This document shows, in pieces, positions 32,735 to 36,591 of a stretch of 64,000 nucleotides of DNA. The notes under the pieces are model-generated. The model saw only the letters and a program-made list of their open reading frames with translations. It made no database searches and was not told the DNA's origin. The stretch lies in contig NW_026781862.1 in NCBI RefSeq assembly GCF_031769215.1, positions 620,001 through 684,000 of the forward strand. The letters run 5' to 3'. The DNA comes from Ylistrum balloti. Its lineage: Eukaryota. A program made the position numbers and the translations under genes. Numbering within the stretch: the first letter of the stretch is position 1; every line of letters starts with the position of its first letter.

Positions 32735-35700
32735 TTAAGATAAGTGAACTTCGCGTTTTTGAGACATTTTCAACAGCGTGTACAAACGCTGGAGAGTTGG
32801 ATGGTTTGATGTGTCTGTGTTCAGCCACTCAATAACTTCCTCTAATTGGTCTTTATTCAGCTGGTGCCATATTCTTCTCTTCTGCATACGTCGTATGTTT
32901 GGATACTGGAAGTAAATCTCTCTGAAATGACGAATAAAACCAGAAATAAATCGTCTGAGACTTAACACTAGAACAAAATACAACGTAATATCAAACTTAG
33001 GCAGTTAGCATCACTGACGAGCACCAGAAGAACGAAGTAACTGTATGATGCGGTTTAGTTCATTTTTTGGATGTGTTGTATCCAACTTAAATTTGTATTA
33101 ACATGCTATTGTCTTGTATGTCCTTTTAACAATTTACAACAAAAACATTTATACTCAATAACAGGAATTGTAAATTCAGAAACTCGCTCTACGTTATGCT
33201 TTACTGGACTCCTCTGCACAGAAACTCGCTCTATCTAATACTACTGCAGTATCATGGTAGTTACCAATAACTAGACTTGTCTACACAGAAACTCGCTCTA
33301 TCTAATAGTACTGCAGTATCATGGTAGTTACCAATAACTAGACTTGTCTACACAGAAACTCGCTCTATCTAATATCATGGTAGTTACCAATAACTACTGT
33401 CTACACAGAAACTCGCTCTTTCTAATACTACTGCAGTGGTAGTTACCAATAACTAGACTTGTCTACACAGAAACTCGCTCTATCTAATAGTACTGCAGTA
33501 TCATGGTAGTTACCAATAACTAGACTTGTCTACACAGAAACTCGCTCTATCTAATACTACTGCAGTATCATGGTAGTTACCAATAACTAGACTTGTCTAC
33601 ACAGAAACTCGCGCTATCTAATACTACTGCAGTACCATGGCAGTTACCAATAACTAGACTTGTCTACACAGAAACTCGCTCTATCTAATAGTACTGCAGT
33701 ATCATGGTAGTTACCAATAACTAGACTTGTCTACACAGAAACTCGCTCTTTCTAATACTACTGCAGTACCGAGGTAGTTACCAATAACTAGACTTGTCTA
33801 CACAGAAACTCGCTCTATCTAATAGTACTGCAGTATCATGGTAGTTACCAATAACTAGACTTGTCTACACAGAAACTCGCTCTATCTAATAGTACTGCAG
33901 TATCATGGTAGTTACCAATAACTAGACTTGTCTACACAGAAACTCGCTCTATCTAATACTACTGCAGTATCGTGGTAGTTACCAATAACTAGACTTGTCT
34001 ACACAGAAACTCGCTCTATCTAATACTACTGCAGTACCGTGGTAGTTACCAATAACTAGACTTGTCTACACAGAAACTCGCTCTATCTAATAGTACTGCA
34101 GTATCATGGTAGTTACCAATAACTAGACTTGTCTACACAGAAACTCGCTCTATCTAATAGTACTGCAGTATCATGGTAGTTACCAATAACTAGACTTGTC
34201 TACACAGAAACTCGCTCTATCTAATAGTACTGCAGTATCATGGTAGTTACCAATAACTAGACTTGTCTACACAGAAACTCGCTCTATCTAATAGTACTGC
34301 AGTACCGTGGTAGTTACCAATAACTGGACTTGTCTATACAGAAACTCGCTCTTTCTAATAGTACTGCAGTATCATGGTAGTCACCAATAACTAGACTTGT
34401 CCACACAGAATCTCGCTCTATCTAATAGTACTGCAGTACCGAAGTAGTTACCAATAACTAGACTTGTCTACACAGAAACTCGCTCTATCTAATAGTACTG
34501 CAGTATCATGGTAGTTACCAATAACTAAACTTGTCTACACAGAAACTCGCTCTTTCTAATAGTACTGCAGTATCATGGTAGTTACCAATAACTGGACTTG
34601 TCTACACAGAAACTCGCTCTATCTAATAGTACTGCAGTACCGAGGTAGTTACCAATAACTAGACTTGTCTACACAGAAACTCGCTCTATCTAATAGTACT
34701 GCAGTGCCATGGCAGTTACCAATAACTAGACTTGTCTACACAGAAACTCGCTCTATCTAATAGTACTGCAGTATCATTGTAGTTACCAATAACTAGACTT
34801 GTCTACACAGAAACTCGCTCTATCTAATAGTACTGCAGTACCATGGTAGTTACCATTAACTAGATACACTAGACTGGTAGTTACCAATAACTACACAGAA
34901 ACTCGCTCTTTCTAATAGTACTGCAGTATCATGGTAGTCACCAATAACTAGACTTGTCCACACAGAAACTCGCTCTAGTTCTAATAGTACTGCAGTATCC
35001 TGGTAGTTACCAATAACTAGACTTGTCTACACAGAAACTCGCTCTATCTAATAGTACTGCAGTATCATGGTAGTTACCAATAAATAGACTTGTCTACACA
35101 GAAACTCGCTCTATCTAATAGTACTGCAGTATCATGGTAGTTACCAATAACTAGACTTGTCTACACAGAAACTCGCTCTATCTAATAGTACTGCAGGCAG
35201 TATCATGGCAGTTACCAATAACTAGGGTTATTTTCCAGGAGGAGTTCTTTTTTTCATGCATTCGTGGGCGGATTGAAATCGCACGAAAATAGTCCCATGT
35301 AAGATAACATCATTTGCTAATTTAATAGTCCATTTCACAATATTCGTGAAAATCACACCCTGATCTTTTGCATCATGGACAAACCAATGAAGTATACATA
35401 ACAGTTGTAGTACTGGACTTACTGACAAATAGCATGATCATGTTCAAGGTTCGCTGTCATGACGACATATGTTCCATTCTCTTTGGTCGTCATAGTTACG
35501 ATTTCAAAATGGCACAGTGACGCCACGGTTCTGTAAATATAAAATATATCACAACTGGAACTAGTTGAGATAAATATATATTGACTTGCACGTGATATCT
35601 TAGTTTAAGTTTGGTAAGACACGAAAAACTGATGAAACTGAAGATGATTTACGTGCCTGCGACGAATTGTTTCTTTTAAATAAGTATAGATTTACCGATG

Positions 35701-36591
35701 TTCATCATTTGTGATTGTTCGACGAAATCGAAGACTTGACAACAATATAAAATATCTATCTGCATGACCGTAGAAAACAAGTTATGGTAGGTATTAGAAA
35801 ACAGAAATCGTAGAAACAGGATAAGAGAGCATTATCGGTGATCAATATAAATGATGCACTCAAACACCAAACGTCTGAAGGACCAGGGAGTTTATGCAGT
35901 GAACAATGAATGGAATTATTGTATAGACTTGTTGGTTGTCTGGGCGGAGAGTCACGGAAAACCAGTGCCAATGAAAATCTGTATTCACCGGTAATTCGGC
36001 CATTTATTAACAATTTCTACTAGCTGTTGCAATGAAATATCTTACTGCAGTCACGATAAGATAGATTCTTACAATTAACATTGTCATGTTAAACGAAACG
36101 CTATCATATTTTGTAAAGTTTGAAATGTTGTTTCCGGGAGGCAATCTTTAGGTATGATGCTGACGAACAGGATATATGGCAAATGCCCACATTTAGCAAA
36201 GGTTGTTTAATTTTTAGGAAATAAGAAGGCAAACTCACAGAAACAAGAGAAAGTGTGGGACAGAAAAAGTAGTCCTGACCATGCAACTTAGTCGATGTCG
36301 CAACTGTAAATACTAAAACGTTATGGATCGCCGCCACGAACATCACAGTATCTGTTATGAGTACAGAAAGGTCATTACCATGGTTACTCACCGTTGTTGA
36401 TGACTTAGTTCACGGTTTGTGATGACGTTTACACGTATACTCCCGTCTTGATAACACCTAAATCTTACACGTTTTTTCTCTTGCCCAGTATTATCTATGA
36501 AGCCTTGGGTATTGGATGTATAATGTTGGCAGAGCGAGACCACACGTGCTTCTAGTTCTTCACGTGAGTTAAACTCTTCACCAACATACAT
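32735..36591 (-). CDS. FAR1/ZSWIM3-N-like (WRKY-GCM1 fold) zinc DNA-binding protein, complement(join(32735..32921,35423..35530,36392..36591)), 164 aa; Mutator transposase-derived, no DDE domain
   Basis: Both donors (GTGAGT, GTAAGT) and both acceptors (TTTATATTTACAG, TTCGTCATTTCAG) are strong and phase 2-2. The spliced ORF is open: MYVGEEFNSREELE...RFRC46...SLC73-x23-H97DH99...YPNIRR...HLS*. Minus-strand AATAAA at 32411-32416 and 32339-32344. Confidence 0.78.
33170..35225. repeat. Tandem array, 67 bp unit, about 30 highly homogeneous copies, inside intron 2 of the FAR1-like gene
   Basis: CACAGAAACTCGCTCTATCTAATAGTACTGCAGTATCATGGTAGTTACCAATAACTAGACTTGTCTA; spacing 33801 to 33868. Confidence 0.97.

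What the first reader, a model, noticed from the sequence alone, without database searches (positions are those of the whole stretch)
32735..36591. Spliced 164-aa gene encoding only a Mutator-type (FAR1/ZSWIM3-N) zinc DNA-binding domain: candidate domesticated transcription factor
Seen: three exons with strong, phase-matched splice sites give an uninterrupted ORF with VGEEFNSREEL, C46, C73-x23-H97-x-H99 and YPNIRR, then a short helical tail and stop, followed by poly(A) signals. No DDE or SWIM domain and no flanking TIRs were found. Established: this CCHH WRKY-GCM1-type domain is the N-terminal DNA-binding module of MULE transposases and has been domesticated repeatedly (FAR1/FHY3, ZSWIM3-like). 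Inference: an intact, intron-bearing, catalysis-free copy among otherwise decayed transposons suggests a selected host factor, such as a transcription factor or a dominant-negative repressor of MULE transposition.
Basis: partly seen in the sequence, partly recalled or inferred. Interest (0 to 1): 0.75.

Follow-up and report, generated by a model that had tools for sequence, protein, structure and literature searches.

The report
Scallop gene: transposon-derived DNA-binding domain only
This is a real three-exon scallop gene, kept in the same chromosomal position in three scallop genera under purifying selection, that encodes only the zinc DNA-binding front end of a Mutator-type transposase; it is a well-supported but unsurprising case of a jumping-gene piece turned host gene, and its function is untested.

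Summary
The minus-strand exons 36591-36392, 35530-35423 and 32921-32735 splice (GT-AG, phase-matched) into a 164-aa ORF. It is identical to NCBI's XP_060067612.1, "uncharacterized protein LOC132547790", of Ylistrum balloti.

The neighbouring 324-aa gene served as a synteny anchor. It led to orthologues with the same three exons, intron positions and phases in Pecten maximus (159 aa, LOC117332584) and Argopecten irradians (160/168 aa).

- **Conservation:** only the exons align between species, not the introns.
- **Selection:** omega is about 0.35, and omega = 1 is rejected (2dlnL 34.7, p 4e-9).
- **Zinc ligands:** C46, C73, H97 and H99 are invariant.
- **Transposon features:** there are no TIRs, no MULE or SWIM remnants and no second copy in the window.
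- **Domain family:** assignment is sub-threshold but consistent. Pfam FAR1 scores 18-19 bits against a cut-off of 28.1. ZSWIM3_N scores 16 bits over its full length in Pecten. Exon 2 alone hits only FAR1 in all three species. ESM Atlas neighbours are all FAR1-clan.
- **Not tested or inconclusive:** my AlphaFold models were too poor to test the fold. No RNA run was available, so splicing and expression are not shown directly.

Verdict: a domesticated MULE-derived DNA-binding-domain-only gene, probably a small DNA-binding regulator. It is a new member of a known kind.

The parts
36392..36591 (-). Exon 1 coding part (aa 1-66 plus 2 nt). It holds the start ATG at 36591-36589, the N-terminal strand and helix, and the first zinc-ligand cysteine C46.
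   Evidence: It aligns to Pecten L002 3896-3709 and Argopecten L003 3159-2972. The nucleotide alignment to Pecten stops exactly at the ATG.
35531..36391 (-). Intron 1 (861 nt, GTGAGT...CAG, phase 2).
   Evidence: It does not align between species. The second allele carries 21 substitutions and 3 indels here, plus a probable insertion of about 51 nt near 35662, against 4 substitutions and no indel in exons 1-2.
35423..35530 (-). Exon 2 (aa 67-102). It holds C73 and the H97-x-H99 motif, and forms the C-terminal half of the FAR1-like domain.
   Evidence: On its own it hits only Pfam FAR1 in all three species, at E 0.089, 0.032 and 0.032.
32922..35422 (-). Intron 2 (2501 nt, GTAAGT...CAG, phase 2). 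It was enlarged by a 67-bp satellite at 33213-35225 (about 30 copies).
   Evidence: The same intron is 410 nt in Pecten and 603 nt in Argopecten.
32735..32921 (-). Exon 3 coding part (aa 103-164 plus the stop). It holds the YPNIRR motif and a helical tail of about 60 aa.
   Evidence: predicted helices. It aligns to Pecten L002 1736-1550 and Argopecten L003 1947-1761. An ESM feature lead points to HTH_FAR1, at 0.84 only.
32339..32497 (-). Candidate poly(A) signals: ATTAAA at 32497-32492, and AATAAA at 32416-32411 and 32344-32339. They lie 238-391 nt after the stop.
   Evidence: This is sequence only; no RNA data were available.
36702..36707 (-). TATAAA motif 116 nt upstream of the ATG; a possible core promoter.
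   Evidence: This is a motif only, it is not conserved in the blastn comparison, and it is untested.
42980..43954 (+). Divergently oriented neighbour: a single-exon 324-aa Ser/Arg/Lys-rich gene. It was used as the synteny anchor and is not part of the FAR1-like gene.
   Evidence: Its orthologues are P0004 (Pecten) and P0007 (Argopecten). Its omega is about 0.08.

Best explanation
**What it is.** LOC132547790 of the scallop Ylistrum balloti is a genuine, single-copy, three-exon host gene. Its 19.6-kDa product has two parts:
- a divergent FAR1/ZSWIM3_N-type zinc DNA-binding domain of the WRKY-GCM1 superfamily, with CCHH ligands C46, C73, H97 and H99 (aa about 3-102);
- a helical, probably helix-turn-helix-like tail of about 60 aa.

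This matches the N-terminal DNA-binding part of a Mutator-like (MULE) transposase. The RNase-H-like catalytic domain and the SWIM finger are missing.

**History.** The gene was fixed before Ylistrum, Pecten and Argopecten diverged. It has stayed next to the same neighbour gene and has been kept by purifying selection while its protein sequence evolves fast.

**Shown here:** the gene structure, synteny, selection, invariant ligand residues, and the absence of transposon ends and catalytic remnants.

**Inferred:** the protein binds specific DNA sequences and acts as a small regulator without enzymatic activity. It most likely occupies sites as a transcriptional regulator or competitor, as proposed for plant FRF proteins.
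For: **Model and identity to XP_060067612.1.**

**Syntenic orthologues.** Pecten maximus (L002, P0006, 159 aa) and Argopecten irradians (L003, 160/168 aa) have identical intron positions and phases. Each lies 6.1-6.8 kb from the same divergent neighbour gene.

**Conservation pattern.**
- 65 of 167 alignment columns are invariant, including C21, C46, H64, C73, H97, H99 and C102.
- Only the exons, not the introns, align between species.

**Selection.**
- NG86 dN/dS is 0.27-0.34. pN/pS is 0.42-0.47, and no bootstrap replicate out of 1000 reached 1.
- IQ-TREE GY+F3X4 gives omega 0.35. The likelihood-ratio test against omega = 1 gives 2dlnL 34.7, p 4e-9.
- A second Y. balloti allele shows 3 synonymous and 1 non-synonymous change and no indel in exons 1-2, against 21 substitutions plus indels in intron 1.

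**Domain family.**
- P0001 scores 19.2 bits on FAR1 (aa 37-101 to profile 26-88 of 90).
- P0006 scores 18.4 bits on FAR1 (profile 3-88 of 90) and 16.4 bits on ZSWIM3_N (profile 1-100 of 102).
- Exon 2 alone hits only FAR1 in all three species.
- ESM Atlas feature neighbours are all FAR1, AFT or ZSWIM3_N (0.86-0.90). Its structural neighbours are all FAR1-RELATED SEQUENCE families, at TM 0.52-0.62 over aa 1-157.

**No transposon features.** No TIRs, no MULE or SWIM remnants and no other copy in the window.

**Precedent.** Stand-alone FAR1-type WRKY-GCM1 domains conserved between species were already read as transposase fragments recruited as transcription factors (PMC1702500). Plant FRF1-4 are the DNA-binding-domain-only analogue (PMC13306707).
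Against: - All Pfam scores lie below the curated cut-offs (28.1 for FAR1, 27.8 for ZSWIM3_N).
- P0001 also hit FUR at an equal score. That hit did not recur in the Pecten orthologue.
- The tryptophan said to be typical of strand 4 in this family (PMC1702500) is Y, C and Y here.
- My AlphaFold single-sequence models were poor (pLDDT 45-49), and their fold searches gave only generic matches.
- No RNA evidence was obtained, so transcription and the junctions rest on conservation and on three independent NCBI models.
- No relative with a transposase domain was identified, so the MULE origin rests on domain family alone.
- DNA binding and any regulatory role are untested.
- Synonymous sites are near saturation (dS 0.85-1.4), so the omega values are approximate. 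The bias runs towards overestimating omega.
Confidence: 0.75

Rival explanations
1. It is a dominant-negative repressor of Mutator-like transposition. The protein would keep the transposase's DNA-binding module, occupy the terminal repeats of MULE elements in scallop genomes and block the full-length transposase, much as the KP protein does for P elements. This is a more specific version of the best explanation, not a contradiction of it.
For: The architecture is a DNA-binding domain only, with no catalytic part. The protein evolves fast for a conserved gene: dN 0.28-0.38 and omega about 0.35, against about 0.08 for the neighbour. That fits a role in genetic conflict. Earlier scan notes report MULE-like elements elsewhere in this genome (not checked by me).
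Against: No related transposase or cognate TIR was identified. The gene has been kept in three genera past synonymous saturation, which is longer than most transposon families stay active. Nothing here links the protein to any MULE sequence.
Confidence: 0.15
2. It is a scallop-specific small protein unrelated to FAR1. The weak Pfam and language-model similarities would then be chance matches to a Cys/His-bearing beta-rich sequence, and the protein need not bind DNA.
For: All HMM scores are below the gathering thresholds, and an equally scoring FUR hit exists for P0001. ESM feature scores are at most 0.90, which the tool calls borderline. The AlphaFold-based fold searches found nothing specific. 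The family-typical tryptophan is absent.
Against: FAR1 or ZSWIM3_N is the top or only hit in every orthologue and in exon 2 of all three species, in a consistent register and near full length in Pecten. All 10 best ESM feature hits and all structural neighbour sets are FAR1-clan. The four ligand positions are invariant. None of 47 non-repetitive control ORF pieces from the same DNA reached E 0.01 for any family.
Confidence: 0.1
3. It is a decaying transposase fragment, or a gene-prediction artefact, that happens to have an open frame.
For: The first searches found no relatives. The domain score is sub-threshold.
Against: The same start, stop region, intron positions and phases are kept in three genera whose synonymous sites are near saturation, and all indels are in frame. 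Omega = 1 is rejected at p 4e-9. Exons align while introns do not. A second allele has an intact frame.
Confidence: 0.03
4. The 164-aa model is only part of a longer gene, whose further exons would add a catalytic or effector domain.
For: Three conserved non-coding blocks lie upstream at 39207-39340, 40356-40625 and 41551-41677, and one lies downstream at 31907-32052. These could be unannotated exons.
Against: An in-frame TGA lies two codons before the ATG, and conservation with Pecten stops at the ATG. The stop falls at the equivalent position in all three species. Three separate NCBI annotations give products of 159-168 aa. No MULE or SWIM signal was found in flanking ORF pieces of 40 aa or more.
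Confidence: 0.05

Closest known systems
Stand-alone 'insert-containing' WRKY-GCM1 (FAR1-type) domain proteins of animals and fungi (Babu et al. 2006, PMC1702500)
   Same: It is a FAR1-type CCHH domain with an N-terminal helix and an insert between the two cysteines (26 residues here). It has no transposase domain, is single copy and is conserved between related genera. The paper interprets such proteins as transposase fragments recruited as transcription factors.
   Different: This scallop family is not described there. The strand-4 tryptophan is replaced by Y, C or Y. The sequence is so divergent that Pfam models score below threshold. A conserved helical tail of about 60 aa is retained.
Plant FRS-RELATED FACTORs FRF1-4 (PMC13306707, PMC6000157)
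   Same: These are MULE-derived proteins that keep only the FAR1 DNA-binding region and lack the MULE and SWIM domains. They are proposed to compete for binding sites without activating transcription.
   Different: The origin is independent (plants against molluscs). No full-length FRS-like partner is known in scallops. The FRF mechanism itself is a proposal, and nothing was tested here.
Metazoan FHY3-like transposon-derived transcription factors (Front Cell Dev Biol 2023, PMC10027918)
   Same: These are MULE/FAR1-derived host genes in animals, including molluscs (Aplysia, Elysia, Crassostrea, Octopus). They show a patchy, lineage-specific distribution.
   Different: That study states that none of its factors had homologues in the closest neighbouring species. 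This gene has syntenic orthologues in three genera. It has the DNA-binding domain only, and scallops were not covered.
Vertebrate ZSWIM1/ZSWIM3 (Pfam ZSWIM3_N, PF21599)
   Same: The N-terminal FAR1-like domain of a domesticated MULE transposase. The Pecten orthologue aligns over the whole ZSWIM3_N profile.
   Different: ZSWIM1/3 keep the RNase-H-like and SWIM domains and this protein does not. The score (16.4 bits) is below the cut-off (27.8).
Drosophila P-element KP repressor (from my own knowledge, not checked here)
   Same: A truncated transposase that keeps its DNA-binding domain and represses transposition by occupying transposase sites.
   Different: KP has a THAP domain, is encoded by internally deleted elements that are still mobile, and is not a fixed syntenic host gene.

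Membership tests
Pfam FAR1 (PF03101) / ZSWIM3_N (PF21599), WRKY-GCM1 superfamily | HMM score at or above the curated gathering threshold | tested here: not met
   FAR1 scores 19.2 bits (P0001) and 18.4 bits (P0006) against 28.1. ZSWIM3_N scores 16.4 bits against 27.8. The E-values of 0.002-0.014 are suggestive and the family is the same in every orthologue.
Pfam FAR1 (PF03101) / ZSWIM3_N (PF21599), WRKY-GCM1 superfamily | Four zinc ligands C...C...H-x-H, with an insert of about 20-70 residues between the cysteines (PMC1702500) | tested here: met
   C46, C73, H97 and H99 are invariant in Ylistrum, Pecten and Argopecten, with 25-26 residues between the cysteines. That these four residues are the ligands is inferred from the register of the Pfam match.
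Pfam FAR1 (PF03101) / ZSWIM3_N (PF21599), WRKY-GCM1 superfamily | N-terminal helix followed by the four-stranded sheet of the WRKY-GCM1 fold | tested here: inconclusive
   The ESM Atlas's own model (pLDDT 0.63) has only FAR1-family structural neighbours, at TM 0.52-0.62. The AlphaFold secondary-structure order (helix 10-26, then four to five strands) fits. However, pLDDT is 45-49 and the fold searches were non-specific.
Pfam FAR1 (PF03101) / ZSWIM3_N (PF21599), WRKY-GCM1 superfamily | Conserved tryptophan in the fourth strand (described as typical, not universal, in PMC1702500) | tested here: not met
   The residue at the expected place before the H-x-H motif is Y88 in Ylistrum, C in Pecten and Y in Argopecten.
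Pfam FAR1 (PF03101) / ZSWIM3_N (PF21599), WRKY-GCM1 superfamily | Zinc-dependent, sequence-specific DNA binding | not testable with these tools
   This needs purified protein (zinc content, EMSA, SELEX or DAP-seq).
Domesticated transposase-derived host gene | Single copy at a fixed, syntenic position in several species | tested here: met
   There is one copy next to the same divergent neighbour gene in three genera. There is one copy in the window and one contig in an independent DNA run. Whole-genome copy number was not testable.
Domesticated transposase-derived host gene | Loss of transposon hallmarks (TIRs, target duplications, catalytic domain) | tested here: met
   No flanking inverted repeats. 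No MULE, DDE or SWIM match in flanking and intronic ORF pieces.
Domesticated transposase-derived host gene | Purifying selection on the coding sequence | tested here: met
   Omega is 0.35, and omega = 1 is rejected with 2dlnL 34.7, p 4e-9. Bootstrapped pN/pS never reached 1.
Domesticated transposase-derived host gene | Transcription and correct splicing | not testable with these tools
   No RNA run was listed for this stretch, and the only holder was a DNA-type contig that contains the introns.
Autonomous Mutator-like element (MULE) | Long terminal inverted repeats and a MULE (RNase-H-like DDE) transposase domain | tested here: not met
   This is not a transposon copy.
Plant FRF subfamily | Common descent with Arabidopsis FRF1-4 within the plant FRS/FRF tree | not tested
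The animal host and the low similarity make independent origin far more likely. The resemblance is in architecture only.

The most novel reading that the evidence does not exclude
The protein is an animal counterpart of plant FRFs or of the P-element KP repressor. It would be a fixed decoy with only a DNA-binding domain that competes with a full-length MULE transposase, or with a MULE-derived factor, for the same DNA sites. That would give scallops a heritable brake on Mutator-like elements or on a MULE-derived regulatory circuit. Its fast but constrained evolution would reflect tracking of changing target sequences.
Probability: 0.2. Interest if true: 0.6.

Novelty: new member of a known kind. 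Interest (0 to 1): 0.42.

Why it matters
The analysis gives three "uncharacterized protein" entries (Ylistrum LOC132547790, Pecten LOC117332584 and an Argopecten model) a common identity. They form one conserved scallop gene family derived from the DNA-binding end of a Mutator-type transposase.

Cases of transposon domestication in molluscs that are well documented by synteny and selection are few. The published metazoan FHY3-like catalogue reported no orthologues between neighbouring species (PMC10027918). This family is small (about 160 aa), easy to express, and suited to DAP-seq or SELEX. It could show what a FAR1-type domain binds in an animal.

The concept itself is established, with stand-alone FAR1-type domains in animals described in 2006 and plant FRFs later. 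The result therefore adds an example rather than a principle.

Tried and rejected
1. **Exon-1 phmmer search.** Against 1.84 billion cluster representatives it found only the protein itself and a spurious bacterial repeat protein. I first read this as 'orphan'. That reading was wrong. The Pecten orthologue most likely sits inside the same 50% cluster. An Argopecten-level match (47 bits) would have E about 0.08 in a library of that size, so the search had little power.
2. **Word-index search with P0001.** It found only the protein itself. A repeat with a two-species profile recovered Pecten P0006 but still missed Argopecten. Blanks from this tool were therefore not used as evidence of absence.
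3. **AlphaFold2 without an alignment.** The whole protein and aa 1-106 gave pLDDT 45 and 49. The Atlas and PDB-wide fold searches on these models returned only generic alpha+beta matches (TM at most 0.40, Z at most 5.2). I treat these as uninformative, not as evidence against the fold.
4. **PDB sequence and profile searches.** Nothing meaningful.
5. **Pfam FUR hit on P0001** (E 0.0013). Rejected as chance, because it is absent from the Pecten orthologue and from every exon-2 search.
6. **Zinc-ribbon Pfam hits in the flank scan**. They trace to the translation of a 60-bp tandem repeat at 26169-26345 and are not a gene.
7. **RNA evidence.** The single run found is a DNA-type contig with the introns. 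It served only as a second allele.
8. **TANGO2 as a synteny anchor.** Not usable, because its exons are too short for the length window of the protein search.
9. **Reads on exon 3.** The reads were laid only on 35226-36900, to stay clear of the long 67-bp satellite. Exon 3 was therefore not examined in the second allele.
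Full report
**Observation.** On the minus strand, exons 36591-36392 (200 nt), 35530-35423 (108 nt) and 32921-32735 (187 nt) join into 495 nt, that is 164 codons plus a stop. The donors are GTGAGT and GTAAGT, and both acceptors follow pyrimidine tracts. An in-frame TGA lies two codons upstream of the ATG. 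Poly(A) signals follow at 32497-32492, 32416-32411 and 32344-32339, and a TATAAA lies 116 nt upstream of the ATG. Intron 2 is filled by a 67-bp satellite of about 30 copies at 33213-35225. The window holds no second copy of the coding sequence.

**Identity.** A phmmer search with exon 1 returned a 164-aa protein (P0001) that is letter-for-letter the spliced model. It is NCBI XP_060067612.1, "uncharacterized protein LOC132547790" of the scallop Ylistrum balloti, on contig JAUZWB010001297.1 of GCA_031769215.1. The gene model therefore already exists in RefSeq, without a name or an assigned domain. The called neighbours are a 324-aa single-exon gene, 6.4 kb upstream and divergently oriented (window 42980-43954, +), and TANGO2, downstream and convergent.

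**Is it a transposon copy?**
- No inverted repeats flank the gene in 26-44 kb.
- Pfam scans were run on 48 stop-to-stop ORF pieces from the flanks and from intron 1. These were 20 pieces of 70 aa or more on either strand, and 28 minus-strand pieces of 40-69 aa. None matched MULE, DDE or SWIM.
- The only sub-0.01 hits were zinc ribbons, and they come from the translation of a 60-bp tandem repeat at 26169-26345.
- One independent DNA run of the same organism holds the stretch as a single contig at about 98% identity.

**Domain family.**
- The whole protein scores 19.2 bits on Pfam FAR1 (E 0.002; aa 37-101 to profile 26-88 of 90), below the cut-off of 28.1. It also has an equal-scoring FUR hit.
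- Exon 2 alone hits only FAR1. Adding exon 1 raises the score and extends the match across the splice junction in register, which supports the junction.
- ESM Atlas feature neighbours are all FAR1, AFT or ZSWIM3_N clusters (0.86-0.90, a borderline level).
- The structural neighbours of the Atlas's own model (pLDDT 0.63) are all plant FAR1-RELATED SEQUENCE families, at TM 0.52-0.62 over aa 1-157. That span includes the helical tail.
- The tail alone gives only weak leads. One of these is a "FAR1 HTH-like" cluster at 0.84, and others are helix-turn-helix folds.
- My AlphaFold2 single-sequence models were poor (pLDDT 45 and 49), and their fold searches were uninformative.

**The turn: orthologues by synteny.** The early searches suggested an orphan. 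The 324-aa neighbour, however, has orthologues in Pecten maximus (P0004, 78% identity) and Argopecten irradians (P0007). I fetched their loci (L002 and L003). In both, 6.1-6.8 kb upstream on the opposite strand, a small gene is called with a product of 159 aa or 168 aa.

A tblastn search and inspection of the sequence show that these are orthologues of the gene in hand.
- They have three exons with identical intron positions and phases. Exon 1 ends ...CAA CG|GTGAGT, and exon 2 ends ...CA|GTAAGT.
- The Pecten coordinates are L002 3896-3709, 2251-2147 and 1736-1550. This is XP_033747447.1, LOC117332584 (P0006).
- The Argopecten coordinates are L003 3159-2972, 2658-2551 and 1947-1761. NCBI starts that model 8 codons further upstream.
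- Amino-acid identity between Ylistrum and Pecten is 57-59%. All indels are in frame.
- 65 of 167 columns are invariant, including C21, C46, H64, C73, H97, H99 and C102.
- Between species only the three exons align. The introns do not.

**Domain family, replicated.** Full-length Pecten P0006 has FAR1 as its best hit (18.4 bits, aa 10-96 to profile 3-88 of 90). ZSWIM3_N is second (16.4 bits, over profile 1-100 of 102), and there is no FUR hit. Exon 2 of Pecten and of Argopecten each hit only FAR1. The scores stay below the curated cut-offs, so formal Pfam membership is not met. The consistency across orthologues, the register and the invariant CCHH positions make a divergent FAR1-type WRKY-GCM1 domain the best reading by far. 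I put this at about 85-90%. One departure is that the strand-4 tryptophan described as typical of this family (PMC1702500) is Y, C and Y here.

**Selection.**

| Measure | FAR1-like gene | Neighbour gene |
|---|---|---|
| Pairwise dN (Nei-Gojobori) | 0.28-0.38 | 0.09-0.16 |
| Pairwise dS (Nei-Gojobori) | 0.85-1.38 | 1.4 to saturated |
| dN/dS | 0.27-0.34 | about 0.08 |
| Raw pN/pS | 0.42-0.47 (0 of 1000 bootstraps reached 1) | not computed |

A three-taxon codon model (IQ-TREE GY+F3X4) gives omega 0.35 and lnL -1426.77. The best omega = 1 model over a kappa grid has lnL -1444.13, so 2dlnL is 34.7 and p is 4e-9. The genera are deeply diverged, and saturation biases omega upwards, so the test is conservative. 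This protein evolves 2-3 times faster than its neighbour.

Within Ylistrum, a second allele differs in exons 1-2 by three synonymous changes and one non-synonymous change (A70T), with no indel. Intron 1 carries 21 substitutions plus indels. All splice sites are untouched.

**Interpretation.**
- *Shown:* a real, single-copy, syntenic, selectively maintained gene in at least three pectinid genera. It has no transposon ends and no catalytic or SWIM domain.
- *Strongly indicated:* its N-terminal 100 aa are a divergent FAR1/ZSWIM3_N-type zinc domain. This domain type occurs in MULE transposases and their domesticated derivatives (PMC1702500).
- *Inferred:* the protein binds DNA and acts as a small regulator or competitor without enzymatic activity.

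The closest precedents are three.
- Stand-alone FAR1-type WRKY-GCM1 proteins of animals and fungi were already read as recruited transposase fragments (PMC1702500).
- Plant FRF1-4 are proposed to compete with FHY3/FAR1 at their sites (PMC13306707).
- FHY3-like factors have been reported in molluscs (PMC10027918).

A KP-like role in repressing MULE transposition is possible but has no specific support. I found no paper that names these loci.

**Limits.**
- No RNA evidence was obtainable. Transcription and splicing are inferred from conservation and from three concordant NCBI models.
- From my knowledge of NCBI's pipeline, such models normally need transcript or protein support. I could not check this here.
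- The fold is not independently confirmed.
- The parental transposon family is unknown.
- Presence outside Ylistrum, Pecten and Argopecten was not testable.
- Reads were laid only on 35226-36900, to avoid the long satellite, so exon 3 has no second-allele data.

**Verdict.** The find is a solid new example of a known kind of event, of moderate interest.

Noticed in passing
window 33213-35225: A 67-bp satellite of about 30 copies (93-97% matches) fills most of intron 2 of the gene. The same intron is only 410 nt in Pecten and 603 nt in Argopecten, so the array expanded in the Ylistrum lineage without disturbing the splice sites.
   Followed up: partly
window 39207-39340, 40356-40625, 41551-41677; also 31907-32052: Collinear blocks of 70-80% identity are conserved between Ylistrum and Pecten. 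Of the three intergenic blocks, two also align directly to Argopecten, and the third (40356-40625) is linked to it only through Pecten. They lie in otherwise unalignable DNA between the two divergent genes, and 31907-32052 lies downstream of the stop. They may be shared regulatory elements or untranslated exons.
   Followed up: partly
window 42980-43954 (+): A single-exon 324-aa Ser/Arg/Lys-rich gene has no Pfam family and no Atlas neighbour. It is conserved in Pecten (78%) and Argopecten (74%) with omega about 0.08, and it keeps a divergent head-to-head arrangement with the FAR1-like gene in all three genera.
   Followed up: partly
window 30009-31051: A 20-bp satellite (consensus unit ATTACTGCAACAGAAGGTAG, about 52 copies) lies between the gene's 3' end and TANGO2.
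   Followed up: no
window 20672-22200 and 24090-24557: Large tandem arrays inside introns of the TANGO2 gene stay open in several frames, giving Cys/Tyr/Ile-rich pseudo-ORFs of up to 311 aa. They produce spurious long ORFs and weak Pfam hits such as HTH_Tnp_4.
   Followed up: partly
window 26169-26345: A 60-bp tandem repeat translates into repeated C-x2-C motifs and draws several zinc-ribbon Pfam hits (E about 5e-4). This is an artefact to keep in mind when scanning ORF pieces.
   Followed up: yes
window 827-2434 (-): A 535-aa ORF carries a B-box zinc finger (38 bits) and an NHL repeat, so it is probably a TRIM-like gene.
   Followed up: no
L002 3349-3645 (Pecten intron 1): About five repeated copies of the motif of roughly 35 nt that surrounds the exon-1 donor site lie inside Pecten intron 1. 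This is a local tandem duplication of the splice-donor region.
   Followed up: no
The exhaustive search with a 66-aa query in a library of 2.4e11 residues cannot see matches under about 54 bits. Synteny recovered what both missed.
   Followed up: yes
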